DNA of 64,000 nucleotides, taken from positions 124,001 through 188,000 of IMG/VR virus record IMGVR_UViG_3300043464_001630; one strand, written 5' to 3'. The notes beneath the pieces are model-generated. The model saw nothing but the letters and a program-made list of their open reading frames with translations. It did no database searches and was not told where the DNA came from. Position numbers and translations under genes: made by a program. Shown here piece after piece: positions 1,999-14,381 of this stretch. Position 1 is the stretch's first letter, and every line of letters begins with the position of its first letter.

Positions 1999-3897
1999 AT
2001 GGCCGGTAATGCAAGATTTCATGACAAACATCATAGGACAAATCATCACACACTGTCTACAGCAGGTATTCCTGACAGTGCTACTGATCCTATCGCATCT
2101 CCTTCGCAGCCATTCCAAGGAGATTTCGTAGTTAATGGACTTTTAAGTTCTAGTAAAGGATTAGATGTTTTATCGGCAAATTACGGAGGAGATGTACATT
2201 GTGAAAATATATATGTAAGAAATACTACTTATACTAATTTCATTTCTGGAGAAGGAACCGAAACTATTATCAGTGACGGAGCATTAACGGGATATGGAGC
2301 AAATACATTAACTTTAGATTTCGGAACTGCTATTTATGCCAAAACTCCGATAGTTAATTTTACGAATTCAATTTCAGCCGCTAGTGCGATATACACAAGT
2401 TTCGCAAAATTTGTTTCACTTTCTACTACTAACTTATCATCAGATAATGTAATAATGAACAGTTTATCTTCTCTTTCATTATCTGCAAGTTCTATAACTT
2501 CGAATAGTCTATCTGCCAGAACATTATCTAGCGAAAGTATAATTTCAAATAATTTATCTAGTCAAAATATATCAGCAACTGATGTTACAGTATCAAACAA
2601 TGTAACCATTAGTGGAAATTGTTTGATATATGGAAATTTATCTGCACTAGGAGATTTGACAGAGATTGAAACTATTTTACAAACTTCTAGTGCCTTTGAG
2701 ATAACAAATACCGATACCACAAGACCCGCATTAACAATAACTCAAAGCGGAACTGCGGAAGCAATAGTGGTAAACTATGATACTGTTTCTAATTATTTAA
2801 AAGTAGACATAGAAGGATTAACAATTAATGGAAAAATTTCGGGATTATCTGGTGTATATTCTCCAAATATAAACACAATAACAAATACAGCTAATTCTGT
2901 ATATACTACGGTTTCTACTAATTCTGCTAATTGGAACACTACATACAACACAGTTTCTTCGACTAGTGCAAATTGGGTAAGTACTAATAGCGCAGTTTTT
3001 AGTAACAGTGCTAATTGGAATTCCGTATATACTACGGTTTCTAGCAATAGTTCTAATTGGATATCTGTTTATTCTAGTGTTTCTAGTAATAGTGGTAATT
3101 GGAATTCTGCATATAATACTATTTTAAATGATAAGCCCATTTGGGATGAAACTTCTTCTATTGTTTATTTTAATTCTGCATATTGGGATTCTGATTACAA
3201 TACAGTTTCTTTTAATTCTGGAAATTGGGATACTACATATAGTACAGTTTCTAGTAACAGCGCCAAATGGGAATCTGATCATTCTACTGTTTCAAGTAAT
3301 TCTGCATATTGGCAAAATACATTCTCCACTGTTAGCGGATCATCTGCTAATTGGGAGTCTACTTATTCAGATGTAAGTTCTAATAGTGCTAACTGGGAAT
3401 CTACATATTCCACTGTTTCGAGTAATTCTGCAAATTGGGAAAATACAAAAACCACAGTAAATTCTAATTCTGCTAATTGGTTAAGCGGAAGTAATACGTT
3501 ATATTTTACTGCCAGTTCTATTACAACTGATTCTTTATCAGCAAATGTTCTATCAGCAAATATCATTCGTTTATATCAAGCAATTCATGTTTCGGTTTCT
3601 GCTGTAACTGTAGCGCCGGGAACGACCACAACAATGACTATTAATTCTCCTTCTTATTATTTTGTTACTGTAACAGGTGCAGGAACTGCTAATTTTAACT
3701 TACCACCAACTAATGGAAACAATAGAGGAATGATGTTTTATATTAAAAATGTAAGTACTACTAATAGTAATCGTCAAGTTAGCGTTAATAATTCAGCAGG
3801 AACTCCACTAACTAATGGAGTATTAGCAGGAAATGGAGGACATTATATCGAAGTTGTTTGGGATGGAGCAGCTTGGCAAGAAATTTCACACGTTTAA
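1999..3897 (+). CDS. Ser/Thr/Asn-rich fibre protein with 14-aa Trp repeats
   Basis: 632 aa; His-rich N-terminus; LSA-type short repeats; 14 SANW-type repeats; TAAATA-N5-ATG. Confidence 0.65.
   Translation: MAGNARFHDKHHRTNHHTLSTAGIPDSATDPIASPSQPFQGDFVVNGLLSSSKGLDVLSANYGGDVHCENIYVRNTTYTNFISGEGTETIISDGALTGYGANTLTLDFGTAIYAKTPIVNFTNSISAASAIYTSFAKFVSLSTTNLSSDNVIMNSLSSLSLSASSITSNSLSARTLSSESIISNNLSSQNISATDVTVSNNVTISGNCLIYGNLSALGDLTEIETILQTSSAFEITNTDTTRPALTITQSGTAEAIVVNYDTVSNYLKVDIEGLTINGKISGLSGVYSPNINTITNTANSVYTTVSTNSANWNTTYNTVSSTSANWVSTNSAVFSNSANWNSVYTTVSSNSSNWISVYSSVSSNSGNWNSAYNTILNDKPIWDETSSIVYFNSAYWDSDYNTVSFNSGNWDTTYSTVSSNSAKWESDHSTVSSNSAYWQNTFSTVSGSSANWESTYSDVSSNSANWESTYSTVSSNSANWENTKTTVNSNSANWLSGSNTLYFTASSITTDSLSANVLSANIIRLYQAIHVSVSAVTVAPGTTTTMTINSPSYYFVTVTGAGTANFNLPPTNGNNRGMMFYIKNVSTTNSNRQVSVNNSAGTPLTNGVLAGNGGHYIEVVWDGAAWQEISHV
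2893..3480 (+). repeat. 42-bp (14-aa) tandem coding repeat, 14 copies, consensus SANWxSTYSTVSSN
   Basis: Trp codons at 2932 and 3478 are 13x42 nt apart with a Trp every 14 residues between. Confidence 0.9.
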
Positions 3898-3900
3898 TAT

Positions 3901-4992
3901 ATGTTCATTAAAAATGGTAGTTATAAAAAACATACACATATTATATCATATGTGCCGCCTACCATTATTTCTCAACCAATTGGAGACATAAAAAACGTCG
4001 GAAATGATTACACGTTTACTATTTCTGCAAAAGGAAGTAAGCCATTAACTTATCAATGGTATAAAAATTACGATCCGATACTAAACGAAACAACTAATGA
4101 ATTAATTTTATCAAATTTACAACTTTCAGACGACGGATCTTACTTTTGCGAAGTACAAAACAATGGATATTTAGTAGAAAGTGATATAGTAGATTTAACA
4201 GTAATAGACAGTTTAAGTTTTTCACAACAACCCGCATCAGTATCAGCTAATCCAAATTCTAATGTATCTTTTAATGTAGTAGTGGATAGCGATACTACTG
4301 TGAACTATCAATGGTATAAGAATTCTTTAATATATCCCGGAACTTCAGATACATTATACATAAACTATGCAACAGAAAACGAAGAAGGAACTTATTTCTG
4401 CGTTGCTTCTAATTTATTAGCGGCAATAACCAGTAATACTGTTACATTAACAGTAAACGATCCTATAGTAATAAAAGAACAACCAACAGATACTTCATTA
4501 CTTGCTGGTGATAATCTAACTTTAAATTTAAGTTGTGTCGGAACATTTCCAATTAGTGCTCAGTGGAGAAAAGATAATACCAATTACGGATCATTAAGTG
4601 TAACAAACGCAGGAGATGTGGATTTAGAAATATTTAATATACAAAATTCCGATGAAGGTAATTATGATTGTGTATTAACAAATATAGTAGGATCAGTTAC
4701 TAGTAATAAAGCACTTGTATACATAAACAAACCACCAGCATTCGCATTAGAACCTTTATCAGGAACAGTTCAAGTCGGTGATTCATTTACTTTCACAACA
4801 AATGCTACGGGAACCAATCCAATTTCGTATCAATGGATAAAAGAAAACACAGGAAATGTAAATGGAGAAGTTCTTAAAAATTATACGTTAAGTAATATAC
4901 AATTTTCTAATTCTGGTAACTATGCCTGTGTTGCTTCTAACTTATACGGTACAGTAACAAGCACATTTGTAACTTTATCAGTTACGAGTTAG
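3901..4992 (+). CDS. Immunoglobulin-domain virion surface protein (4 Ig domains, Hoc-like)
   Basis: Four units of (Y/A)QWxK ... (D/E)xGxYxCxxxN. Confidence 0.85.
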   Translation: MFIKNGSYKKHTHIISYVPPTIISQPIGDIKNVGNDYTFTISAKGSKPLTYQWYKNYDPILNETTNELILSNLQLSDDGSYFCEVQNNGYLVESDIVDLTVIDSLSFSQQPASVSANPNSNVSFNVVVDSDTTVNYQWYKNSLIYPGTSDTLYINYATENEEGTYFCVASNLLAAITSNTVTLTVNDPIVIKEQPTDTSLLAGDNLTLNLSCVGTFPISAQWRKDNTNYGSLSVTNAGDVDLEIFNIQNSDEGNYDCVLTNIVGSVTSNKALVYINKPPAFALEPLSGTVQVGDSFTFTTNATGTNPISYQWIKENTGNVNGEVLKNYTLSNIQFSNSGNYACVASNLYGTVTSTFVTLSVTS

Positions 4993-5007
4993 AAAATCTC
5001 CACAATA

Positions 5008-5772
5008 TTATTTGTTGGTTCCTAAATCATATGTACCATACATGTCGGTATCATTCACTTCCATATCAAATACAAACTTCTTACTTTCTTCGTCAATTGA
5101 ACCTTCGTAAGATTTCGGAGCCGAAGAAACTTCACCCGCGATAGTACTCGTGAGTTTTCCGTAGAATGTATCTAACGTCATTTGTTCGTTCACACCTTCT
5201 TGTGGTAATCCGGGTTCCCAACTGTATTCCATTCTCATGGCTTTTACTTCCCAGCCATAATGACCACCAAGAACATTCATTTGTTCTCCTATATTCTGGT
5301 CTCTTTTTTGTGTAATTTGAAAGTATCTACCTGTTCTTCCGCCTACTCTATCGCTTCCGTATTCGTGCATTTCAAATACATCCCCTGCTTTTGGTTCTAC
5401 AGACTGATTTAATTCTGTGTATACACTAGCACCAGACATAACTTTTAAGAAGTTATTATATGCCATATAACCCGTGGCATCGTCTCCTGCATTGAATCCG
5501 AATTTACTTTGTGATAAACTAGATTCATTTAAATTAATGTACATCTTGAGAGTGTGAGGCCCGTCATAAACACTCGTGGGCTGTTCTCCGTACAACACAT
5601 CAGCAGATAACGGAGTAGTTGTATTAACCCAATAATTCACCTTCTGACCCATGCTGTTAACCATTTCTTCTGCCACATTAGCAAACACAGCAAGATCTGG
5701 TGCTAACCGAGCTTTATCATATAACTCGTAGCACATACTATTATTACCAGCACCAGTATAGTAACAAGACAT
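5008..5772 (-). CDS. Neck/head-closure protein (T4 gp14-like)
   Basis: GQKVNYW, DVLYGEQP, SKFGF, PKAGDVF, YFQIT motifs typical of gp14; size. Confidence 0.7.
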   Translation of the reverse strand: MSCYYTGAGNNSMCYELYDKARLAPDLAVFANVAEEMVNSMGQKVNYWVNTTTPLSADVLYGEQPTSVYDGPHTLKMYINLNESSLSQSKFGFNAGDDATGYMAYNNFLKVMSGASVYTELNQSVEPKAGDVFEMHEYGSDRVGGRTGRYFQITQKRDQNIGEQMNVLGGHYGWEVKAMRMEYSWEPGLPQEGVNEQMTLDTFYGKLTSTIAGEVSSAPKSYEGSIDEESKKFVFDMEVNDTDMYGTYDLGTNK

Positions 5773-5774
5773 AA

Positions 5775-6095
5775 TTAAGAAATTTTATTAACTACAAATC
5801 CAGTAGGAAGTTTTTGTAGAGTGAATGGACGTTTACCTAATTGTTTCGGTGTATTTAATTCTTCCGCATTTAATTCGTGTTTACTAATCAAATCAAAAGC
5901 TTCGGCATTTGAAATTGCTCCAGTTTTTTGCGATTTGTTTTGATTATAATTAGCATCATTTTTACTGTATCTTTTTGCTACCATGTTAACTCCTGTATTT
6001 TTACCATCTCTAGGAGCGCCAGTTCTAAAAAAACGCGAATTTCTCATGTGATGAGGATTTACGTGTTCATAAAAGTATTCTTCGAAAGATACCAT
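5775..6095 (-). CDS. Small late protein, possible internal head protein
   Basis: MVSFEEYFYE start resembles T4 capsid-targeting sequences; TAAATA-N6-ATG. Confidence 0.45.
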   Translation of the reverse strand: MVSFEEYFYEHVNPHHMRNSRFFRTGAPRDGKNTGVNMVAKRYSKNDANYNQNKSQKTGAISNAEAFDLISKHELNAEELNTPKQLGKRPFTLQKLPTGFVVNKIS

Positions 6096-6110
6096 GTTAA
6101 TTATTTAGCA

Positions 6111-6144
6111 AAAAAGGACGGACTCCGAAGAATCCGTCCTTTTT
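6111..6144 (-). terminator. Rho-independent terminator (possibly bidirectional)
   Basis: AAAAAGGACGGA...TCCGTCCTTTTT inverted repeat; CTTCGG tetraloop on the minus strand; just past the stop of 6167..6784. Confidence 0.85.
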
Positions 6145-6166
6145 ATTTTTTAAATTTAAGTTTCTA

Positions 6167-6784
6167 TTAACCGAAAATAGAATCACCCTTACCGTTTGGA
6201 TTATACTTAGGATTGTTTACCTTGATAGAACCACCGGGCTTGGCTTGATCAACTTTCTTAGTGAAAGGCATGTAATGTTCAGTGCCTTGAGTTTGTGAGG
6301 TCTTTTCAGCCTTACCATGAGCACTTGTCTTATTTGCTACTGCACCTTCTACACGAGAATTGGACATCTTTTGAAGCTTTTCTGCCTTTGACTTTGTTTC
6401 GAAGGGTTCGTACTTAGACTGAGGAGCTTCGTGCATTGTTTCTTCTTCTTCCTCTTCTTCAGCAGCTTCGTCGCCTTCTTCTTCGTCAGAATCTTCAGCA
6501 GCTTCGTCTCCCATATCTTCTCCACCTTCTTCACCCATTTCTCCGCCTTCTTCTTCGGTTTCTTCTCCACCACCAAGAATACCGCCTAGTAGATCATGAA
6601 GCTTTTGTGCAGTTTCGCGATCTAAAGTAAGAGTGACTTCATCGCCACCTTCTTCAGAACCGAAATCTTCACCACCCATTTCACCAGCACCTTCTGAACC
6701 TTCGCCAGAAGGTAGACCTAGTGCTTCTGCGTCATCTTGCATTACTTCTTCGAATAGCTTTTCAAATAGAGATTTATTGCTCAT
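6167..6784 (-). CDS. Highly acidic low-complexity protein, possible prohead core/internal protein
   Basis: Glu/Gly-rich middle, basic C-terminus; TAAATA-N5-ATG. Confidence 0.5.
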   Translation of the reverse strand: MSNKSLFEKLFEEVMQDDAEALGLPSGEGSEGAGEMGGEDFGSEEGGDEVTLTLDRETAQKLHDLLGGILGGGEETEEEGGEMGEEGGEDMGDEAAEDSDEEEGDEAAEEEEEEETMHEAPQSKYEPFETKSKAEKLQKMSNSRVEGAVANKTSAHGKAEKTSQTQGTEHYMPFTKKVDQAKPGGSIKVNNPKYNPNGKGDSIFG

Positions 6785-6855
6785 ATTTCTATTTACTCTC
6801 GTACATAATATTTTTTATAGCTTTTTTTAATTTTTTTACATTTTTTATATTTTGG

Positions 6856-6861
6856 TAAATA
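6856..6861 (+). promoter_or_regulatory. T4-like late promoter core TAAATA for terL
   Basis: 5 nt before ATG 6867, which favours 6867 over the TTG at 6852 as the start. Confidence 0.7.
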
Positions 6862-6866
6862 ACGAC

Positions 6867-7241
6867 ATGCCTAGAAAACCAAAAAAAGACATATACATGA
6901 ACAATCCAGCCCTACCAACAGTAGAGGCTCAATTCGAATGGACACCACAAATGGTGGCGGAATTAAAGAAGTGTAAAGAAAATATATTACATTTCGCGGA
7001 AAACCATTTTTATATTATTTCACTAGACGAAGGTAAACAAAAAATAACACTACATCCATATCAAAAGAGGGCATTAAGGATGATTAGGGACAATCGAAAT
7101 TCCATCATGTTGTTTAGTCGTCAAACTGGAAAATGCCTTGACGCCAACAACTTATGTAAGATTCGTGATAAAAAAACTGGTGAAATACAGGAACTTACGA
7201 TAAAAAAGATTTTTGATATTTCTGCTCTTGAAAAAGAGTGA
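6867..7241 (+). CDS. terL: Terminase large subunit, N-terminal fragment fused to split-intein IntN
   Basis: T4 gp17-like YMNNPAL, ELKKCKENILHFAENHFYIISLDEG, LHPYQ; Walker A SRQTGK followed directly by intein block A CLDANN. Confidence 0.92.
   Translation: MPRKPKKDIYMNNPALPTVEAQFEWTPQMVAELKKCKENILHFAENHFYIISLDEGKQKITLHPYQKRALRMIRDNRNSIMLFSRQTGKCLDANNLCKIRDKKTGEIQELTIKKIFDISALEKE
7134..7238 (+). mobile_element. Split intein N-fragment (IntN, 35 aa)
   Basis: CLDANNLCKIRDKKTGEIQELTIKKIFDISALEKE then stop; starts with Cys right after the Walker A Lys. Confidence 0.88.
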
Positions 7242-7262
7242 GGTCGTTATAAAATATAGGTG
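7228..7262 (+). promoter_or_regulatory. Putative sigma70-like promoter plus SD for the endonuclease gene
   Basis: TTGAAA(7228)-N16-TAAAAT(7250); AGGTG at 7258-7262 before ATG 7267. Confidence 0.4.
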
Positions 7263-7266
7263 ATTT

Positions 7267-8553
7267 ATGAAATCATCTAAAAACGAAATCAAATATTGCA
7301 AAATCACCGGAAAAGAACTAGATCCAGAAAAACAAAAAGCATCAGGAAATGGCTTATTCATTTCTGGTGCTGTCCGAGCTTTATTCAAAAAGAATAATAA
7401 AGATGTAGAAAAAACTAGAGAAGCTTTGAAGGATTTCTATTGGGTCGAAGAAATTGTAGGATACTATCCGAATTGGATATCTTGTGCCAGAGCTTTAACT
7501 ATGGCAGAAATTTCAGTCGAACAACAAGAAGAGATATACAACAGAGAATTTTTATCTAAGAGTAAATGCCAATTAGAAACATGTAATAAAAACATTCCAT
7601 ACGACATGCGAGGAATATCTGCATGTTGCGTCACTCATTATAATCAAGCATACGCAATCAAAAATAATAAATTTGATATATCTGATTATAAGTACGAATG
7701 TTTGGAATGTGGAATGAAATTTGCCAATAATATTTCTTTAGGAACGCATATTTCTCAGAATCATTTCACATCTGAAGAATATTATATTAAATTTCATAAA
7801 AAGTCAGAAGAAGAAGGACACTGTAAATGGTGTAATAAAGAAACGTCTTTTAATTCTATCCAAGAAGGCTACAACAAATTTTGTTATAACACTAGTTGTA
7901 ATGTGAATTACTATAACAAATACGAAAACCGACACGAAGCTTGTGGGGACGCTATTAGTAAAGGTTTGAAAGAATCACAAAATATGCCAAACCAAATTGG
8001 ATATTGGACTAAAAAAGGCTACACAGAAGAACAAGCAAAAGCTTTAGTATCAGAACGACAAACTACTAATACTGTGCCAAAAATAATGAAGCGAGAACAG
8101 TGCGACGAAAACGAAGCCATTCAAAAAAGAAAAGAAATAACTAAAAAATGGTTAGATTCATTTCCTAAACAAAATTATTCAAATGTTTCGCAAGAATTAT
8201 TTTGGCAGATACATGAAAATATTAAAAATGATTATAAAGAAATTCATTTTGCTACAATTTTAAATGGAACTAAAGTTTCAGATGGAAGTAATAATGAATT
8301 TAGAATTAAAACAGATAAAACTGTTAGATCATTGGATTTTTTCGTAAAAGACTTAAATAAAGTAATCGAATTCAATGGATACTATTGGCATGGTGCAAAA
8401 AATAAACATTACGATGAAACCAAAGATAAACAAAGATTAGATGAATTAAAAAATTTAGGATTATCTGTTTTAATAGTAAACGAACTCGATTACTACGAAA
8501 ACAAATCCAAGATCATAGAACAATGCATAAATTTCATTAACAATGGAAACTAA
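7267..8553 (+). CDS. Free-standing putative homing endonuclease: zinc fingers plus Vsr/DUF559-like nuclease domain
   Basis: C2H2 finger CLECGMKF...HISQNH, CKWC..FC..SC; C-terminal LDFFVKDLNKVIEFNGYYWH...DKQR...GLSVLIVNE; lies between the split-intein halves. Confidence 0.8.
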   Translation: MKSSKNEIKYCKITGKELDPEKQKASGNGLFISGAVRALFKKNNKDVEKTREALKDFYWVEEIVGYYPNWISCARALTMAEISVEQQEEIYNREFLSKSKCQLETCNKNIPYDMRGISACCVTHYNQAYAIKNNKFDISDYKYECLECGMKFANNISLGTHISQNHFTSEEYYIKFHKKSEEEGHCKWCNKETSFNSIQEGYNKFCYNTSCNVNYYNKYENRHEACGDAISKGLKESQNMPNQIGYWTKKGYTEEQAKALVSERQTTNTVPKIMKREQCDENEAIQKRKEITKKWLDSFPKQNYSNVSQELFWQIHENIKNDYKEIHFATILNGTKVSDGSNNEFRIKTDKTVRSLDFFVKDLNKVIEFNGYYWHGAKNKHYDETKDKQRLDELKNLGLSVLIVNELDYYENKSKIIEQCINFINNGN

Positions 8554-8893
8554 AAAATTCATAGAATCCCGTAAAGTCGAAGATTACGAAATATGGACTG
8601 ATGAAGGATGGGCAGATATTCAAGAAGTACATAAAACAATAAAATTTGATGTATGGACGGTAGAAACCGAAAACTTCGAAATACAATGTGCTGACGAACA
8701 CATCGTAATTGGGGAAAATCGTGAAGAAATTTATGTAAAAGATCTAAAAATAGGAGATAAGATCATCACAGAAAATGGACCAGAATCTGTAATTAGAGTA
8801 GAAAAATTAGATGTCGAACCAGAACACATGTATGATCTCAGTATAGATTCAGAAAATCATACATTTTTCTCGAACGGAATCTTATCACATAAC
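8543..8893 (+). mobile_element. Split intein C-fragment (IntC, 117 aa)
   Basis: No N-terminal Cys; block B-like CADEH, block F MYDLSI, block G SNGILSHN followed by Ser+1. Confidence 0.9.
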
Positions 8894-11128
8894 AGTACGT
8901 TGGCTACTATTTTTATGCTTTGGGTGGCTATTTTTAATGATGACCAAAGAATATTATTAGTAGCAAACAAAGAAAGTACTGCAAAAGAAATCTTTAGAAG
9001 AATTCGAGTCGCCTACGAAGGATTACCAAACTGGCTAAAAGCACCAGTTACTTATTATGGTCTAGAATCTCTCGAATTACAGAACGGATCTCGTATAAGT
9101 ATAACAACAACAACGGGAACCGCAGGTCGTGGTAGTAGTGCGAATCTGTTGTTTGTGGATGAAATGGACTTTATCGAATGCGTAGAAGGGTCAACTACAA
9201 TAAAATTAAAAAACGTAACAACGGGAAAAATAGAAGAAATGTCTATTAAAGACATGCATGATAATAGTAAACATCTATTAAATTTCGATAATTTTCAAAT
9301 ATTATCAGACGATGGCTGGAAATCATTCAAAGGAATAGTAAAGAACGAGAATATTAGATCTGTTAAATTACTATTTGATGATAATACAGAATTAATATGT
9401 AGCGAAGATCATGAGTTATTATCGGATTCTGGAGAATTCATTTTAGCAAAAAAATCAGAAAACACAAAACTAATTTCTGATAAAGGATTTAAATTTGTAA
9501 AGACTGTTTCGGAAAATGGAAAGATAGATGCGTATGATGTTACCGAAGTAGAAGGTAGTAGATATTACACAAATGGGGTGATATCGCACAATTGTAACAT
9601 GCTGTCTGAGTTTTGGTCTTCTGTGTATCCGATTATTTCTTCTTCTAAAAAATCTAAAATCATTGTGGCATCTACTCCAAAAGATACATCAGGTTTATTG
9701 TACAAGCTTTATGATGGTTCAGTAAAAGGAACAAACAACTGGGCACATATGAAAGTACTGTGGAGTGATGTGCCGGGAAGAGATGAAAAATGGAAGAACG
9801 AAACCATATCAGCTCTTGGAGATGTTGGCACTTTCAGGAGAGAATTTGAGTGTGTGACAGGTGAAACTCTCGTCACCATATTAAACAATAACGAGACTAG
9901 TTCAATTACCATCGAAGAATTGTACAAATTAAATAAAAACGGTATAAAAGTTCTAACTCCTTCTGGATTCAAAAATTTCGATGGTATTCAAAAATTAAAA
10001 AAAGAATGCTTAGAATTAGTTCTTAAAACTACATCATTAAAATGTAGCACAAATCACAAAATTTTGACAAAAGGTGGGGATTTCAAATTTTCAAATGAAT
10101 TAACTGTTGGTGAATTCATAAAAACATCTAACGGATATGATGAAATTGTAAAAATACAAGATTCCGGAGTTTTAGATGTATATGATTTGTTGAATGTAGA
10201 AACAAAACAATATTACACTAATGATATTGTATCACATAATTGCACTTTCGATGAGGTAGGCGAATCCGCAATTGATGAAGGTTTATTCGATGATATGCGA
10301 AAATATACAATGGAGCCTATGTATATTTTTGAAAATGGCTGTTATCTTCTCTGGGAGAAACCAAATCCCGACAGACTTTATGTTGCTGGAGTGGATATTG
10401 CAGAAGGAGTCGGAAAAGATGCTACTGTTATTCAGGTATTAGACATTACAGAACCAACAAGAATAAAACAAGTAGCAATTTATCATAACAATAAAATATC
10501 TCCGTCTGAATTCACACCAAAATTACGAGAAATCTTACAACATTGGGGTGATCCATTAGCAATGATCGAGCGTAATGGTTGTGGTGCGCAAGTTGTTGAT
10601 AACTTAAAAAGAGAATTTAGTTATGATAATATAGTAAACTGGGGAATTAATAAAGTCGCGAACAAAAAATCCATGCAACATGGACTAGTTTCGCATACGA
10701 ACACAAAATATACTGGTGTTATGAACCAGAGATATTGGGTGAATACCATGCGTTGCGTACAGATTAATGATATTAATACGGTATTAGACATGAAAGATTT
10801 TATTAGAACTAAATCTGGACATTGGAGTGCTAAAAACGGAGCGAACGATGACAGAGTGATGGCATTGGTATGGGCTCTTATGATTTTACACGAAGATATT
10901 GCTCCGGTCTATTTCGATATCATAGATAAAGACGAATTCGGAAAACCAAAAGTCATAAAATCTGTGGATTATGGAATAAGATATTTCTCTAATCCAACAT
11001 CTATATACACAAATGAAAAAGACGGAATAGGAGGAGATGCCATGCCAATGGTTTTTGGTGGAGATAATTCAGACAACACAGACTTGGACGATCTGATGAA
11101 TCAAGGATGGAAACCATTAAATTATTAA
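8543..11128 (+). CDS. terL: Terminase large subunit, C-terminal fragment: IntC plus exteins with two cis mini-inteins
   Basis: IntC ends ILSHN/S; gp17 motifs LVANKESTAKEI, Walker B LFVDE, ASTP, nuclease GVDIAEGVGKD, IERN, NDDRVMAL. Confidence 0.93.
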   Translation: METKKFIESRKVEDYEIWTDEGWADIQEVHKTIKFDVWTVETENFEIQCADEHIVIGENREEIYVKDLKIGDKIITENGPESVIRVEKLDVEPEHMYDLSIDSENHTFFSNGILSHNSTLATIFMLWVAIFNDDQRILLVANKESTAKEIFRRIRVAYEGLPNWLKAPVTYYGLESLELQNGSRISITTTTGTAGRGSSANLLFVDEMDFIECVEGSTTIKLKNVTTGKIEEMSIKDMHDNSKHLLNFDNFQILSDDGWKSFKGIVKNENIRSVKLLFDDNTELICSEDHELLSDSGEFILAKKSENTKLISDKGFKFVKTVSENGKIDAYDVTEVEGSRYYTNGVISHNCNMLSEFWSSVYPIISSSKKSKIIVASTPKDTSGLLYKLYDGSVKGTNNWAHMKVLWSDVPGRDEKWKNETISALGDVGTFRREFECVTGETLVTILNNNETSSITIEELYKLNKNGIKVLTPSGFKNFDGIQKLKKECLELVLKTTSLKCSTNHKILTKGGDFKFSNELTVGEFIKTSNGYDEIVKIQDSGVLDVYDLLNVETKQYYTNDIVSHNCTFDEVGESAIDEGLFDDMRKYTMEPMYIFENGCYLLWEKPNPDRLYVAGVDIAEGVGKDATVIQVLDITEPTRIKQVAIYHNNKISPSEFTPKLREILQHWGDPLAMIERNGCGAQVVDNLKREFSYDNIVNWGINKVANKKSMQHGLVSHTNTKYTGVMNQRYWVNTMRCVQINDINTVLDMKDFIRTKSGHWSAKNGANDDRVMALVWALMILHEDIAPVYFDIIDKDEFGKPKVIKSVDYGIRYFSNPTSIYTNEKDGIGGDAMPMVFGGDNSDNTDLDDLMNQGWKPLNY
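9179..9592 (+). mobile_element. Cis mini-intein (138 aa) just after Walker B
   Basis: DEMDFIE/CVEGST...CSEDH...AYDVTEV...TNGVISHN/C; no endonuclease domain. Confidence 0.92.
9851..10240 (+). mobile_element. Cis mini-intein (130 aa) at the FRREFE/C motif
   Basis: CVTGET...CSTNH...VYDLLNV...TNDIVSHN/C. Confidence 0.92.
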
Positions 11129-11136
11129 ATAGTTAA

Positions 11137-11712
11137 ATGGGAAATGCATTTGATCAGTCATTATTAAACAAATCTAGGAAAGATAAGTTTGTATTGACTA
11201 TTTTTCTTCCAGAAGCAATTAGAGATTTAAATTCCAAAGAAGATAGAAAAAATTCCAAATTAAATCTAGAGAGTCTTCAAATGTCTATCTACGGAACCGT
11301 TGTTCCAAGAAACGTTATACCACAAGAAGAAGTCAGATATGCAGGAAGTACTGTATATGTTTCGTCACACAATAAACCTTCGTATGATCCAGTAAGTGTA
11401 AATTTCACGATAGATAACGAATTTAAAAATTATTGGGTAATACACAGATGGCTAGAACTGTTAAGAACAGAACGTGGTGGATATTATGAACACCCAGAAG
11501 AATTCAAAAATGTAGGATTAGGACAATATTCCACAGATTTCGTAGTCACCGCAAAAGACGAATATCACAACGATGTTATACAATGGACATATAAATCAGC
11601 TTTTCCGATTTCTTTAGGAGAGATTAATTATAGTTACAGAGATGGAGGAGAAATCGAAACTTCTTTCGAATTTGTATTTAGAAGAATCGAGACAATTTTG
11701 CTACCCTTGTAA
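11137..11712 (+). CDS. Tail tube terminator/completion protein (T4 gp3-like)
   Basis: Tube-fold motifs YDPVSVNFTIDNEFKNYWVIHRW, AFPISLGEI; next to sheath gene. Confidence 0.7.
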   Translation: MGNAFDQSLLNKSRKDKFVLTIFLPEAIRDLNSKEDRKNSKLNLESLQMSIYGTVVPRNVIPQEEVRYAGSTVYVSSHNKPSYDPVSVNFTIDNEFKNYWVIHRWLELLRTERGGYYEHPEEFKNVGLGQYSTDFVVTAKDEYHNDVIQWTYKSAFPISLGEINYSYRDGGEIETSFEFVFRRIETILLPL

Positions 11713-11744
11713 AAAAATTAGTTTAAAAAATACTAAATATCTTT

Positions 11745-14381
11745 ATGGCAAGAAGCATTCAATCTCCCGGAGTAGAAATCTTCGAAAAAGATCTCACGTT
11801 ATCTCCTATTTTACCAGCAGGAACGAATATTTTCATGACAGGCTTTGCAACAAAAGGCCCTTGTGATGAAGTACTACAAATCACCTCTGTTTCTGAATTA
11901 GAGCAAGTATACGGAACACCTACAAATCCTGTAGAACGCTATTTTTACTATGGTGCTCGTCAGATTCTTAACAGTTCTAACGGCAATCTTTTCGTAAGTC
12001 GTATGCCTTATGGTGAAGACGGCGGAGAAGGTTATGGTTCACGTTACGGTGCATTGGTATATCCAGTAGTTTCTGTATCTGAACTTTCTGGGCAAGTAAC
12101 TCGCAACACCAAGCCAATTGCTGCACAATTTTTAGCATTAAACACAGTAGTTACCGAAATTTCAACAAGTCCTACTTTATCAGGTCAATTAAATTCATTG
12201 ACTGCTAATGGTATTCCCGGATATGAAAAATACACAGAAACTGAAGGTGCTTCGTTCGTTACTGGTTTAACTAATTATTACAACGCAAACATTACAGTTC
12301 CTTCTAATAGTGCAGTTGCGGCACAAGCACAAGCACTCACAGGGTTTTTCGTCACTTCAAACGATACCGTAGTATCTACTGATCTCAGTTTATCTGGAGC
12401 TACTTTTGTTCTTGGTGCTCCTAAGTTTTTCGATCTTAATCTAGCACAATATCAATCAGTAATTGATGGTTCTGGATTCACAAACACAAATTCAACTTGG
12501 TCTGCTGCTTCTGATGATGTTAATAATATCAACAGTGTTGCGGATTTCGGTAAAGCTGGTTTGATCGTTGTTAATAAGATTCAATCTACTATTAACAATC
12601 GTTTCGAAGGACATTATGTTGGTATTGCCGATAACACCAACCTTCTAGCTAACACAGATCATACTTCAATTCGTAAAATTTACACCACTGGAAGCAGCGC
12701 AAGTAACGGACTAGTAGTTGGTAGTGGTTATGTCGAAGTTCCTACTTCTAAACTAGCATTTCCTCTTTCTGCAACAACTGATTCCGGAAATAATCGTAAT
12801 TCACGAAGCCTTTCAGAAATTCTAGAAAAAGTATCAGATTCATTCCCTGATATGTCAAGTGATAAGTTTGATGATACTATTTCATTCGGACTATTCAAAC
12901 TTCGTACAAGTCCATACAATCCAGATGCAATTAAACTAGATTTTGCATTCGAAGAAGCACGTACTGGTTCATTTGACTTCTATCGCCAAATCAACAATCA
13001 AAATGGTGGAATTGCAAATACATTCTACATTGAGAACGTAGTAAATTCTTCTAATAACGTAACAACTTTCATCAACAGCTATATTAATGGTAAAAATAGT
13101 GGCACTTGGCTAGATGCAGAAGGAGTACCAACTAAACAAGTACGTGTATTCTCACACAATTCAGTACAAGCATTGAAAGATTCTTTCGAAAGTAATTACG
13201 CTAAGTTTGGTTTCCATGTTAATGACGTAGCAGCAATTGAATCTTCTATGGATTATGCTGATGCATTATTCCCCGCTGGATGTTTCTCTACATTCACTAC
13301 TAATGGCAAATCTATCGGTTCACTTCCATTAAAGATTGATCGTACTCTACGTAAAATAGAAAATGATGAAATTTTCCCCTTAGATCTAGTAGTAGAAGCA
13401 GGTCTAGGAACTGTTTTCGCAACAGCTTGTGCAAATCATACTAGTTTCTACGATGATACTCAAATTTCACAAGGATTAATTGAAGGATTAAGCGCAATGA
13501 CTAAAAATGATCTGATTCCTCCTACAGATGATCGTCATAATGTGCGGGATAACTACAATACTATTTTCCAAATTTTTGCAAACTTCTGCGAAAATCTAAG
13601 AAAAGATTGTTTATTCATTGCAGATCCACTTCGTCAAATTTTCGTTACTGGTGCGAATAGCTTAGTAATGTCAGATACTACTAGGTCATTCTCTCAATAT
13701 ATCTATAACCCACTTCGTCATTTATTCGGTACTGCTAATACAAGTTACGCAACTACATACGGTAACTGGGTTAAAGTTAATGATATGTTTGCTGGTATGA
13801 ATATTTGGGTTCCGTTCTCTCCGTTTGCTGCCGCTGATATGGCAAATGTAGACCAGAATTTTGAGCCTTGGTATGCTCCTGCTGGGTTTATTCGTGGTAA
13901 AGTTACGAATGCATTAGCACTTGCTATCAATCCTAGCCAAAAAAATAGAGATAGTTTGTATAAGGCTTGTATAAACCCGGTTTGCTTCTTTCCTAATGAC
14001 GGTTTTAATATCTTCGGACAGAAGACATTACTACGTCAGCCAAGTGCATTTGATCGTATTAATGTTCGTCGTCTTTTCTTATATTTGGAGAAAGCAACAA
14101 AACGTACTGTTAAATACTTTGTATTCGAACCTAATACAATGTTCACCAGAAATCGCGTAGTTGCGGTATTAGATCCTATTTTCGAAAGGGCAAAAAATAC
14201 ACAAGGTCTATATTCGTATATCATCATTTGCAATGCATCCAACAATACTCCAACGGTAATTGATCAAAATGAACTAGTTGTGGATATTTATTTAAAGCCA
14301 GTACGTTCAGCAGAGTTCATCTTGGTGAACTTCTATGCTACATCAACTGGAGCTAACTTCAGTGAATTGATCGGACAATAA
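11745..14381 (+). CDS. gp18: Tail sheath protein
   Basis: SPGVEIFEKDLT, PWYAPAG, INPV, GQKTL, FDRINVRRLFL, FEPN, KPVRSAEFI. Confidence 0.96.
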   Translation: MARSIQSPGVEIFEKDLTLSPILPAGTNIFMTGFATKGPCDEVLQITSVSELEQVYGTPTNPVERYFYYGARQILNSSNGNLFVSRMPYGEDGGEGYGSRYGALVYPVVSVSELSGQVTRNTKPIAAQFLALNTVVTEISTSPTLSGQLNSLTANGIPGYEKYTETEGASFVTGLTNYYNANITVPSNSAVAAQAQALTGFFVTSNDTVVSTDLSLSGATFVLGAPKFFDLNLAQYQSVIDGSGFTNTNSTWSAASDDVNNINSVADFGKAGLIVVNKIQSTINNRFEGHYVGIADNTNLLANTDHTSIRKIYTTGSSASNGLVVGSGYVEVPTSKLAFPLSATTDSGNNRNSRSLSEILEKVSDSFPDMSSDKFDDTISFGLFKLRTSPYNPDAIKLDFAFEEARTGSFDFYRQINNQNGGIANTFYIENVVNSSNNVTTFINSYINGKNSGTWLDAEGVPTKQVRVFSHNSVQALKDSFESNYAKFGFHVNDVAAIESSMDYADALFPAGCFSTFTTNGKSIGSLPLKIDRTLRKIENDEIFPLDLVVEAGLGTVFATACANHTSFYDDTQISQGLIEGLSAMTKNDLIPPTDDRHNVRDNYNTIFQIFANFCENLRKDCLFIADPLRQIFVTGANSLVMSDTTRSFSQYIYNPLRHLFGTANTSYATTYGNWVKVNDMFAGMNIWVPFSPFAAADMANVDQNFEPWYAPAGFIRGKVTNALALAINPSQKNRDSLYKACINPVCFFPNDGFNIFGQKTLLRQPSAFDRINVRRLFLYLEKATKRTVKYFVFEPNTMFTRNRVVAVLDPIFERAKNTQGLYSYIIICNASNNTPTVIDQNELVVDIYLKPVRSAEFILVNFYATSTGANFSELIGQ

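What the first reader, a model, noticed from the sequence alone, without database searches (positions are those of the whole stretch)
7267..8553. Zinc-finger/Vsr-like endonuclease gene inserted between the split-intein halves
Seen: a 428-aa ORF with several Cys/His fingers and a C-terminal IEFNGYYWH nuclease domain. It overlaps the IntC start by 11 nt and has its own sigma70-like promoter and SD, unlike the late-promoter terL. Known: 'fractured gene' loci with free-standing Vsr-like homing endonucleases between split-intein halves are described from metagenomes. Inference: the endonuclease invaded and split the intein, mobilises the cassette into intein-less terL alleles, and couples translation of the terL C-half to itself.
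Basis: partly seen in the sequence, partly recalled or inferred. Interest (0 to 1): 0.6.

Follow-up and report, generated by a model that had tools for sequence, protein, structure and literature searches.

The report
Homing endonuclease inside split terminase intein
A selfish nuclease gene sits inside a self-splicing protein element in the DNA-packaging gene of an uncultured lake phage and cuts that gene in two; this arrangement was described in 2009, but close relatives here preserve the empty, intein-only and intein-plus-nuclease states at the same site.

Summary
The ORF is real: 7267-8553, + strand, 428 aa. It has three conserved Cys/His clusters. Its C-terminal domain (residues 301-428) folds like I-Bth0305I and Vsr, and the catalytic residues are conserved in 35 or all 36 aligned sequences. 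It lies between a 35-aa IntN fused to the terL N-half and a 117-aa IntC fused to the terL C-half. The intein sits at the Walker A junction GK|S, and the ORF overlaps the IntC start by 11 nt.

Close terL relatives show three states at this site: empty, a contiguous 153-aa mini-intein, and split intein plus endonuclease. Alignment of the alleles shows that a ~1.3-kb insert supplies both the IntN stop codon and the IntC start codon. This supports "the endonuclease invaded and split the intein".

The endonuclease is under purifying selection (dN/dS 0.12-0.21).

The claimed sigma70 promoter and SD are not supported. This phage does not use SD. The "SD" is one arm of a conserved hairpin around the start codon.

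Homing activity, the target allele and translational coupling remain untested inferences.

Verdict: a new member of the known "fractured gene" / EDxHD endonuclease kind (Dassa 2009). Side finding: the same cassette occupies P-loops of several unrelated phage ATPase genes.

The parts
6867..7133 (+). terL N-extein (89 aa), ending in the Walker A motif SRQTGK. The likely start is the ATG at 6867, preceded by TAAATA-N5.
   Evidence: (phrog_5989 terminase large subunit, E 1.9e-19)
7134..7238 (+). IntN, 35 aa, starting with Cys1 (intein block A only). The stop codon TGA is at 7239-7241.
   Evidence: It aligns with the first 35 residues of the contiguous inteins of L090 and L099.
7239..8554 (+). Inserted endonuclease cassette (~1.3 kb), absent from the contiguous-intein alleles. 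It supplies the IntN stop, a 25-nt spacer, the endonuclease ORF and the IntC start codon. It replaces 3-4 linker codons.
   Evidence: junctions of the window against L099 and L090
It is not above chance.
7257..7279 (+). RNA hairpin: 10-bp stem with AGGUGA in the 5' arm and the AUG of the ORF as the 3-nt loop. A degenerate TAAATA-like element lies just upstream (7248-7256).
   Evidence: dG -8.1 kcal/mol, z -4.2; 85% of cells paired against 30-50% when slid; 4 pairs changed on both sides
7267..8553 (+). Free-standing homing endonuclease gene, 428 aa
7567..7899 (+). Zinc-binding modules (residues 101-211): CX4C...C..H, a classical C2H2 finger, and a CX2C...CX4C ribbon. Presumed DNA recognition.
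   Evidence: zf-C2H2, weak; profile against PRDM9 fingers, E 8.9e-7
7984..8166 (+). Conserved helical module (residues 240-300) with motifs GYWxKKGYTEEQA and SERQTT. It is shared by all homologues whatever the host gene.
   Evidence: (nearly invariant Y246 W247 G251 E254 R264 Q265 T267 K294 W295)
8167..8550 (+). Vsr-like / EDxHD nuclease domain (residues 301-428). Candidate catalytic residues: D357, E368, N370, H375, D387, E406.
   Evidence: (Z 10.9 to 3r3p, 10.3 to 1cw0, 11.0 to 3hrl)
8543..8893 (+). IntC, 117 aa. It carries intein blocks B, F and G and ends in SHN, followed by Ser+1.
   Evidence: (PT-HINT 29.0 bits, cut-off 27.7)
8894..9178 (+). terL extein segment between intein 1 and intein 2 (includes Walker B, LLFVDE)
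9179..9592 (+). Second intein: contiguous mini-intein, 138 aa, Cys1/Cys+1, next to Walker B
9593..9850 (+). terL extein segment 2
9851..10240 (+). Third intein: contiguous mini-intein, 130 aa, Cys1/Cys+1
   Evidence: (Vint)
10241..11128 (+). terL C-terminal extein (nuclease domain, Terminase_6C)

Best explanation
ORF 7267-8553 encodes a free-standing homing endonuclease of the EDxHD (Vsr-like, I-Bth0305I) family. It has an N-terminal zinc-finger DNA-recognition region and a C-terminal nuclease domain.

The gene, with its own short leader, inserted into a contiguous ~153-aa mini-intein. That intein already occupied the Walker A junction (GK|S) of the large terminase gene of a T4-like, 236-kb freshwater phage. 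The insertion lies after intein residue 35. It produced an atypically split intein (IntN 35 aa, IntC 117 aa) and a terL gene in two ORFs. The 5' end of the insert provides the stop codon of the N-half. Its 3' end provides the ATG of the C-half, 11 nt inside the endonuclease ORF.

Inferred steps:
- The two TerL halves are rejoined by protein trans-splicing.
- In mixed infections the endonuclease cuts terL alleles that lack the cassette. Repair from the occupied allele then copies the cassette, alone or together with the intein.
- A conserved hairpin that buries the start codon limits endonuclease translation from read-through terL transcripts.
- The C-half is translated by termination-reinitiation coupling or from the same message.
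For: Fold:
- AlphaFold2 model, mean pLDDT 88.3.
- Residues 301-428 match 3r3p I-Bth0305I (Z 10.9, rmsd 3.1 A over 97 residues), 1cw0 Vsr (Z 10.3) and 3hrl (Z 11.0).
- Foldseek's top PDB hit is 3r3p, probability 1.00.
- Phage hits in BFVD are named VSR endonuclease, DUF559 or homing endonuclease.

Sequence:
- The profile of 36 homologues matches 3r3p at E 1.9e-5 and Vsr at E 6e-3.
- E368 and H375 are invariant. D357, D387 and E406 are kept in 35 of 36.
- They align with I-Bth0305I D196, E206, H213 and D222 (PMC3239194).

Selection: dN/dS is 0.12-0.21 among four alleles at 76-86% identity.

Insertion history:
- Among terL relatives at 69-98% extein identity, site 1 is empty in 11 loci, holds a contiguous intein in L090 and L099, and is split with the endonuclease in the window, L003, L007 and L101, and also in the more distant relatives L004 and L008-L010 (33-63% extein identity).
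- The junctions are sharp.

Same architecture in independent metagenomes.

Hairpin.

Overlap with IntC: 54 of 69 related loci.

IntN/IntC pairing:
- ipSAE 0.57 against a best control of 0.02; verdict "weak support".
- The mark was reached by 51 of 78 solved complexes and 2 of 108 mismatched pairs. At 0.60 or under it was reached by only 5 of those 78, and by all 4 mismatches that passed.
- Runs agree in >=84% of contacts. Partner pLDDT is >=64.

Matches the published model of Dassa 2009.
Against: - No biochemical evidence: cleavage, target site, trans-splicing and coupling are all untested.
- Single-sequence matches are weak: Pfam MTES_1575 scores 17.4 bits against a cut-off of 38.2, and 3r3p scores E 0.019.
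- No RNA data exist for this phage.
- In the window's clade the phage-type start motif ahead of the endonuclease is degenerate, and the AUG sits in a 3-nt hairpin loop. Expression may therefore be very low.
- Sequence alone cannot say whether the enzyme recognises the intein-less terL or the endonuclease-less intein.
- The only hint that occupied and empty alleles co-occur is one contig joint at low likeness.
Confidence: 0.8

Rival explanations
1. The endonuclease homes only into endonuclease-less mini-intein alleles. Its target would be the intein DNA spanning its own insertion point. It would not home into intein-less terL, so the reader's "mobilises the cassette into intein-less terL alleles" would be wrong in detail.
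For: [quoted passage not shown]
- Contiguous-intein alleles exist among close relatives (L090, L099).
- The intein sequence flanking the insert is conserved, also across host genes.
Against: - The N-terminal recognition region of the endonuclease is not conserved across host genes. Only residues ~230-428 match. This fits recognition of host-gene DNA rather than intein DNA.
- Empty alleles are the commonest state among relatives (11 loci).
- I-Bth0305I cuts the uninterrupted host gene next to the insertion site.
Confidence: 0.3
2. The endonuclease is no longer mobile. It would be a retained remnant, kept intact because its 3' end carries the only start codon of the essential terL C-half and because precise loss is rare.
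For: - The C-half ATG lies inside the ORF and lacks the TAAATA-N5 start motif.
- The start motif of the endonuclease is degenerate in this clade.
Against: - dN/dS of 0.12-0.21 holds over the whole 428 aa, not only the 3' end.
- All candidate catalytic residues are intact.
- Presence/absence is patchy among close relatives, as expected for an active element.
Confidence: 0.12
3. It is a repair-type or defence-type nuclease: a true Vsr mismatch endonuclease, or a nuclease that attacks competitors' or host DNA. It would lie next to terL by chance and not be a homing element.
For: - The fold is shared with Vsr and DUF559 proteins.
- Some database names read "very-short-patch-repair endonuclease".
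Against: - Of 80 related IMG/VR loci, 69 lie directly between intein halves. Most of the rest are variants of the same arrangement.
- The nuclease domain has no Cys/His cluster where Vsr has its zinc site.
- The enzyme has a 300-aa extra N-terminal region.
- The nearest solved relative by sequence is the homing enzyme I-Bth0305I.
Confidence: 0.04

Closest known systems
Fractured genes of Dassa et al. 2009 (PMC2677866), including their Lake Gatun terminase locus
   Same: - Three same-strand ORFs: host N-part with IntN, free-standing Vsr-like endonuclease, IntC with host C-part.
- Short spacer with a hairpin at the endonuclease start.
- Overlap of the endonuclease end with the IntC start: 6-69 bp there, 11 nt here.
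- Freshwater phage origin.
- Their terminase intein is also split at an unusual point, leaving a long IntC (122 aa) that holds all motifs except N1.
   Different: - I could not compare sequences, so identity of the insertion site is not shown.
- Here the pre-invasion alleles (empty and contiguous intein) are available from close relatives. The model's prediction that the invader brings the stop and the start codon is therefore seen directly.
- This terL carries two further inteins.
I-Bth0305I, prototype of the EDxHD homing endonucleases (PMC3239194; PDB 3R3P)
   Same: - C-terminal Vsr-like nuclease fold.
- The same catalytic positions are conserved.
- Bipartite build: a DNA-binding N-part and a nuclease C-part.
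   Different: - I-Bth0305I sits in a group I intron of recA and uses NUMOD/HTH-type DNA-binding motifs.
- This protein sits in a split intein and has three zinc-binding modules plus an extra N-terminal domain.
- Sequence identity is about 21-22% over the nuclease domain.
Atypically split TerL inteins GOS-TerL and AceL-TerL (as reviewed in PMC11766414)
   Same: - Natural split inteins in phage TerL.
- Very short IntN (37 and 25 aa) and long IntC (115 and 104 aa). Here the lengths are 35 and 117 aa.
   Different: - Those use Ser1/Cys+1 and Cys1/Cys+1. This one is Cys1/Ser+1 at the Walker A GK|S junction, so it is probably a different insertion site.
- The window's third intein has Cys+1.
Aeh1 nrdA split by the free-standing endonuclease MobE (Gibb and Edgell, cited in PMC2677866; PMC3045599)
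   Same: - A free-standing endonuclease splits an essential phage gene.
- A hairpin containing a late-promoter-like element sequesters the translation start.
- The endonuclease overlaps the downstream gene.
   Different: MobE splits a gene without any intein, and the halves reassemble non-covalently.
Extein switching of actinophage inteins through a shared nucleotide-binding site (bioRxiv 10.1101/2025.01.02.630785)
   Same: Related inteins occur in non-orthologous genes that share a nucleotide-binding motif.
   Different: - Those inteins carry in-frame LAGLIDADG domains.
- Here the travelling unit appears to be an atypically split intein plus an EDxHD endonuclease, found in at least six kinds of P-loop ATPase gene.

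Membership tests
EDxHD (Vsr-like) homing endonucleases | C-terminal nuclease domain with the Vsr / I-Bth0305I fold | tested here: met
   - VIA-align: Z 10.9 to 3r3p (97 of 98 residues, rmsd 3.1 A), Z 10.3 to 1cw0, Z 11.0 to 3hrl, all on model residues 301-428.
- Foldseek probability 1.00 to 3r3p.
EDxHD (Vsr-like) homing endonucleases | Conserved catalytic residues (I-Bth0305I D196, H213, D222; the acidic residue at Vsr Phe62; variable Asn208 position) | tested here: met
   - D357 35/36, E368 36/36, H375 36/36, D387 35/36.
- N370 varies as N/D/Q.
- Register from the HMMER alignment to 3r3p and PMC3239194.
- The counterpart of E170 is uncertain: E310 in SQELF is mostly conserved, but its alignment to E170 is not established.
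EDxHD (Vsr-like) homing endonucleases | Significant sequence similarity to family members | tested here: met
   - Profile against 3r3p: E 1.9e-5.
- Single sequence only E 0.019.
- Pfam MTES_1575 is below its cut-off.
- phrog_3339 'homing endonuclease': E 2.7e-4.
EDxHD (Vsr-like) homing endonucleases | Site-specific double-strand cleavage of the uninterrupted target allele | not testable with these tools
   Needs a cleavage assay.
[quoted passage not shown] | Host N-part with IntN, endonuclease ORF, and IntC with host C-part, on one strand and adjacent | tested here: met
[quoted passage not shown] | Short spacer with a hairpin at the endonuclease start; overlap of the endonuclease end with the IntC start | tested here: met
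   - 25-nt spacer.
- Hairpin dG -8.1 kcal/mol, z -4.2, with covariation.
- 11-nt overlap.
[quoted passage not shown] | Intein halves retain the splicing motifs and together make one HINT domain | tested here: met
   - Cys1; block B (CADEH), block F and terminal SHN with Ser+1 are read directly from the sequence.
- 35 + 117 aa align end to end with the 153-aa contiguous inteins of L090 and L099.
- PT-HINT is above its cut-off.
[quoted passage not shown] | Protein trans-splicing restores the host protein | not testable with these tools
   Only a complex prediction with weak support is available: 0.57 against a best control of 0.02.
GOS-TerL / AceL-TerL atypically split inteins | Short IntN (25-37 aa) and long IntC (104-122 aa) in TerL | tested here: met
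   35 and 117 aa; published values
GOS-TerL / AceL-TerL atypically split inteins | Same insertion point and junction residues (Ser1/Cys+1 or Cys1/Cys+1) | tested here: not met
   Here the junction is Cys1/Ser+1 at Walker A. The published inteins have Cys+1. Their sequences were not at hand.
Vsr mismatch-repair endonuclease proper | Single ~150-aa domain with a structural zinc site and T:G mismatch recognition | tested here: not met
   - 428 aa with a 300-aa N-terminal extension.
- No Cys/His cluster in residues 301-428 apart from H375 and C420.
- The context is an intein, not a dcm-type gene.

The most novel reading that the evidence does not exclude
The unit "atypically split class-1 intein plus EDxHD endonuclease" may be a P-loop-seeking mobile cassette. 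The proposal is that it has moved between non-orthologous phage ATPase genes by using the shared GK[ST] Walker A codons, while the endonuclease's N-terminal recognition region was exchanged.

- Hosts seen: large terminase, ClpB-like, DnaB-like helicase, gp44-like clamp loader, SbcC/SMC-like and ResIII helicase.
- Evidence: the window's IntC is 35-52% identical to IntCs in those other hosts, as close as to divergent terL IntCs. The endonuclease C-halves are 28-42% identical.
- On an IntC tree each multi-member non-terL host group (DnaB-, Clp-, gp44- and SbcC-like; ResIII is a single long-branched row) forms one clade nested among terL inteins, and the whole tree needs only the minimum 5 label changes.
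- The terL locus of this phage clade would then be a natural series showing every step: empty, intein, fractured, and in relatives in-frame fusion.
Probability: 0.55. Interest if true: 0.6.

Novelty: new member of a known kind. Interest (0 to 1): 0.4.

Why it matters
The arrangement itself has been textbook for intein specialists since 2009, so the finding is mainly a correct annotation of a terL gene that would otherwise look broken. The value added has four parts:

1. It gives a nucleotide-level before-and-after comparison. This confirms the gene-breaking model: the invading element supplies the stop codon of the upstream half and the start codon of the downstream half.
2. It provides a natural allele series at three intein sites in one essential gene. 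This could serve for measuring homing and co-conversion in lake phage populations.
3. It offers a large set of natural, atypically split inteins with a ~35-aa IntN and Cys1/Ser+1 or Thr+1 junctions. Inteins of this type are sought for peptide-based protein labelling.
4. It hints that one intein-endonuclease cassette spreads among P-loops of unrelated ATPases.

Tried and rejected
- Megablast of the locus against cultured phages: no match. The nearest cultured terL is only ~27% identical.
- NCBIfam: nothing relevant.
- sigma70 promoter: not above shuffles.
- T4 late promoter TATAAATA: 5 sites in the window against 15 expected, so it is not a promoter of this phage.
- The local TAAAATATAG string is not enriched.
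- Shine-Dalgarno: at background frequency in this phage.
- Intrinsic terminator between the ORFs: none found.
- Paralogues in the 236-kb genome: none for the endonuclease. Inteins of this type occur only in terL.
- RNA evidence: no RNA run holds the locus.
- Read laying gave contigs only. One low-likeness joint skipping 7134-8945 hints at an intein-less allele in run X4 but is weak.
- The first Foldseek search of the whole 428-aa model gave E values above 1e-3. The domain-level signal came from VIA-align.
- The N-terminal 95 residues were not assigned to any fold. They were not searched alone.
- The big representative-protein search was not used, because the word search had already found 43 relatives.
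Extein pieces were used one by one by reference.
Full report
**1. The observation**

The window has an ATG-started ORF at 7267-8553 on the + strand, 428 aa long.

- Upstream ORF. It ends at 7241; its likely start is the ATG at 6867. It encodes 89 residues of a T4-type large terminase up to the Walker A motif SRQTGK, followed by 35 residues that start with Cys.
- Downstream ORF (8543-11128). It starts with 117 residues ending in SHN, followed by Ser and the rest of TerL.
- Overlap. The ATG at 8543 lies 11 nt inside the 428-aa ORF.
- Motifs. IEFNGYYWH is at residues 367-375. There are three Cys/His clusters. For the first two, the ligand columns are conserved in 24-30 of 36 homologues; the third recurs in the alignment consensus.

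In DNA of 33% G+C a 428-codon frame with 43 database relatives is far beyond chance.

**2. What the protein is**

Single-sequence family scans are weak:
- Pfam MTES_1575: 17.4 bits against a cut-off of 38.2, plus a C2H2 finger.
- phrog_3339 "homing endonuclease": E 2.7e-4.
- PDB top hit 3r3p (I-Bth0305I): E 0.019.

With an alignment of 36 homologues (A1) the evidence is firm:
- The profile matches 3r3p at E 1.9e-5, Vsr at 6e-3, and tandem C2H2 fingers at 8.9e-7.
- The AlphaFold2 model has mean pLDDT 88.3.
- Its residues 301-428 superpose on 3hrl (Z 11.0), I-Bth0305I (Z 10.9, 97 of 98 residues) and Vsr bound to DNA (Z 10.3).
- Foldseek ranks 3r3p first with probability 1.00.
- Among predicted viral structures the hits are phage proteins named VSR endonuclease, DUF559 and homing endonuclease.

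Conserved residues:
- E368 and H375 are invariant. D357, D387 and E406 are kept in 35 of 36 sequences.
- In the HMMER alignment they fall on I-Bth0305I E206, H213, D196 and D222. Those are the catalytic positions described for the EDxHD family (PMC3239194).
- The nuclease domain has no Cys/His cluster where Vsr has its zinc site, as reported for the family.

Upstream of the nuclease domain:
- A helical module (about residues 240-300) is nearly invariant across all relatives.
- Before it come three zinc modules and a 95-residue N-terminal domain. Only relatives from the same terL site share these.
- This bipartite build, with a variable recognition part and a constant catalytic part, is usual for phage homing endonucleases.

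**3. Is the gene functional?**

Four alleles at 76-86% protein identity give dN/dS of 0.12-0.21 over the whole ORF. The neighbouring IntC plus extein gives 0.05-0.11. The protein is therefore under purifying selection. It evolves faster than terL but is not decaying.

**4. Did it invade and split an intein?**

I searched IMG/VR with the last terL extein segment by reference. I then mapped each extein and intein piece separately on the relatives. At 69-98% extein identity the Walker A site shows three states:
- Empty, with N-extein and next extein contiguous: L091-L096, L098, L100, L102-L104.
- Occupied by an uninterrupted intein: L090 and L099.
- Split with the endonuclease: the window, L003, L007/L088 and L101, and also the more distant relatives L004 and L008-L010 (33-63% extein identity).

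Translation of L090 and L099 shows one open 153-aa intein. Its first 35 and last ~115 residues align with the window's IntN and IntC.

At the DNA level the alleles are collinear up to the codons for EKE. They are collinear again from the codons for KFIES. In between, L099 has 12 nt, and the window has about 1.3 kb (7239 to about 8554). The insert begins with the TGA that ends the N-half. It ends with the ATG-GAA-ACT that starts the C-half.

This is what the gene-breaking model of Dassa et al. predicts. The split point lies between intein block A and block B. This is the "unusual" point that Dassa et al. noted for their terminase locus. It also resembles the atypically split GOS-TerL and AceL-TerL inteins, although those have Cys at +1 and so probably sit at another site.

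A complex prediction for IntN plus IntC gave weak support:
- Score 0.57 against a best control of 0.02.
- The mark was reached by 51 of 78 solved complexes and 2 of 108 mismatched pairs. At 0.60 or below it was reached by only 5 of the 78, and by all 4 mismatches that passed.
- Runs agree in at least 84% of contacts. Partner pLDDT is at least 64.

The stronger argument that the halves fit is that they are the two pieces of an intein that is contiguous in relatives.

**5. Expression signals**

The sigma70-like match (7228-7255) is one of 9 in the 2-kb region, against 11.0 +/- 3.7 in shuffles.

The phage does not appear to use Shine-Dalgarno sequences: 7 of 46 long ORFs have an SD-like 4-mer against a 12% background. 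Instead, 22 of 48 ORFs of 100 aa or more have TAAATA within 20 nt of the ATG. Fifteen of these are at a spacing of exactly 5 nt, whereas only 1.9% of all ATGs have the motif.
- The terL N-half has this motif.
- The endonuclease has TAAAATA at 10 nt.
- The terL C-half has none.

In more distant relatives (L004, L115, L009, L010) the endonuclease has the canonical TAAATA-N5-ATG. The element therefore uses the phage's own start signal, not a bacterial promoter with SD.

- The hairpin recurs in L003, L007, L101, L112, L113 and, with quite different arm sequences, L004.
- On seven sequences, 85% of cells pair against 30-50% when the partner is slid. Four pairs change on both sides. Between 2 and 9 of 500 shuffles reach the observed measures. 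This is modest but consistent support.
- Dassa et al. found such hairpins in 15 of 16 loci, often with a late-promoter element. They compared them with the translational control of the Aeh1 endonuclease.
- If TAAATA marks a transcription start a few bases downstream, the element's own transcripts would lack the 5' arm and be translatable, while read-through terL transcripts would hide the AUG. This is inference only. No RNA run holds the locus.

**6. Coupling to the C-half**

The 11-nt overlap is kept in the whole clade. Of 69 related loci, 54 overlap, commonly by 8, 11 or 25 nt. Where there is no overlap, the C-half has a start motif of its own: TAAATA-N8 in L004 and TAAATA-N5 in L010. Coupling in the window's clade is thus plausible, but it is not shown.

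**7. Homing**

What is shown:
- A patchy distribution of three allelic states among close relatives from lake metagenomes.
- An intact, selected nuclease.
- One contig in run X4 that joins 7134 to 8945 while the same run holds endonuclease pieces. This is weak, because it was laid at low likeness.

What is not shown: cleavage, the target, or preferential inheritance. The target could be the empty terL site or the endonuclease-less intein. The host-specific N-terminal region and the behaviour of I-Bth0305I favour the former. Dassa's remark that the endonuclease integration point lies within the intein keeps the latter open.

**8. Wider distribution (side finding)**

IMG/VR holds at least 225 relatives. 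Of the best 80 loci:
- 69 have a long IntC (95-175 aa) directly downstream.
- 6 lie at a conventional split point of a DnaB-like intein (L069-L072, L081, L086).
- 4 are fused in frame to IntC and the host C-half (L001 = Vibrio phage Va1, L054, L059, L085).
- 3 carry an extra ORF between the endonuclease and IntC (L029, L077, L078).

Most of the 69 sit at GK|[ST] of terL. I assigned these terL labels from junction motifs, not all by Pfam. Others sit at the P-loops of other ATPases:
- ClpB-like ATPases (L024, L030, L031).
- DnaB-like helicases (L063, L065, L066, L080).
- A gp44-like clamp loader (L074, L076).
- SMC/SbcC-like proteins (L027, L044, L045, L051).
- A ResIII helicase (L062).

The window's IntC is 35-52% identical to these, and the endonuclease C-halves are 28-42% identical. 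On a short IntC tree each multi-member non-terL host group (DnaB-, Clp-, gp44- and SbcC-like) is one clade within the terL diversity; the single ResIII row sits on a very long branch. DnaB and Clp are well supported, and the rest are poorly resolved. P-loop inteins and extein switching through nucleotide-binding sites are known. This particular cassette's spread over unrelated ATPases is, as far as the papers I could search go, not described.

**9. Verdict**

The finding is real and its core interpretation holds. It is a new member of a kind known since 2009: a fractured gene with an EDxHD endonuclease in an atypically split TerL intein. The promoter/SD part is wrong, and the homing and coupling parts are untested. 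Interest is moderate. The allele series and the P-loop distribution are the parts worth following up.

Noticed in passing
window 9179-9592 and 9851-10240: The terL C-half carries two further contiguous mini-inteins (138 aa next to Walker B, and 130 aa; both Cys1/Cys+1). This terL therefore has three inteins. Both sites are empty in many close relatives.
   Followed up: partly
window-wide, e.g. 1986-2001, 6854-6869, 11124-11139, 11732-11747: TAAATA-N5-ATG precedes many genes: 22 of 48 ORFs of 100 aa or more have TAAATA within 20 nt, 15 of them at exactly 5 nt, against 1.9% of all ATGs. SD-like motifs are at background level. This could be a promoter for leaderless or short-leader mRNAs, or a translation signal; which is unknown.
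   Followed up: partly
L103 4370-5742 (also L104, L100, L003 2746-3617): In relatives the second terL intein site (contiguous in the window) is itself split after ~34 aa. The inserted ORF differs from the window's endonuclease. In L103 it is a 316-aa protein with a TnsA-like nuclease domain (26.9 bits, cut-off 26.5) that overlaps the IntC start by 14 nt.
   Followed up: partly
L024, L027, L030, L031, L062, L066, L074 and others: The same intein-plus-endonuclease cassette sits at the Walker A GK|[ST] junction of ClpB-like, SMC/SbcC-like, ResIII, DnaB-like and gp44-like genes of other uncultured phages.
   Followed up: partly
L030 1513-5850: A Clp-like gene appears fractured at both of its P-loops. 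The ORF upstream of the endonuclease begins with an IntC-like HINT segment and ends with an IntN.
   Followed up: no
L001 4053-6341 (Vibrio phage Va1, MK387337.2), L054, L059, L085: The endonuclease is fused in frame to IntC and the terL C-half in one ORF. In Va1 this ORF is annotated simply as putative terminase. These may be intermediates towards an in-frame endonuclease domain.
   Followed up: partly
L029 4560-5258, L077 4617-5138, L078 1906-2715: An extra ORF of 174-270 aa with no recognised family lies between the endonuclease and the IntC, which follows further downstream. It may be cargo carried inside the fractured gene.
   Followed up: no
window 7134 to 8945, run X4: One metagenome contig joins the Walker A region to the extein after IntC, skipping 1810 nt. 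The same run also holds endonuclease pieces. This hints that intein-less and occupied alleles co-occur in one lake sample. The joint was laid at low likeness, so it is weak.
   Followed up: no
own genome G000:C1:67731-67847 (outside the window): A weak second match to the MTES_1575 nuclease family (13.5 bits, E 0.013) in a 180-aa frame. It was not examined.
   Followed up: no
L002 (LR756500.1, 462-kb uncultured phage) 3859-7447 and 8445-10292: This megaphage has the same fractured terL at Walker A, with a longer IntN (69 aa). A few kb downstream there is a second terL-like N-fragment and another large zinc-finger nuclease-like ORF with the same type of nuclease motif.
   Followed up: no
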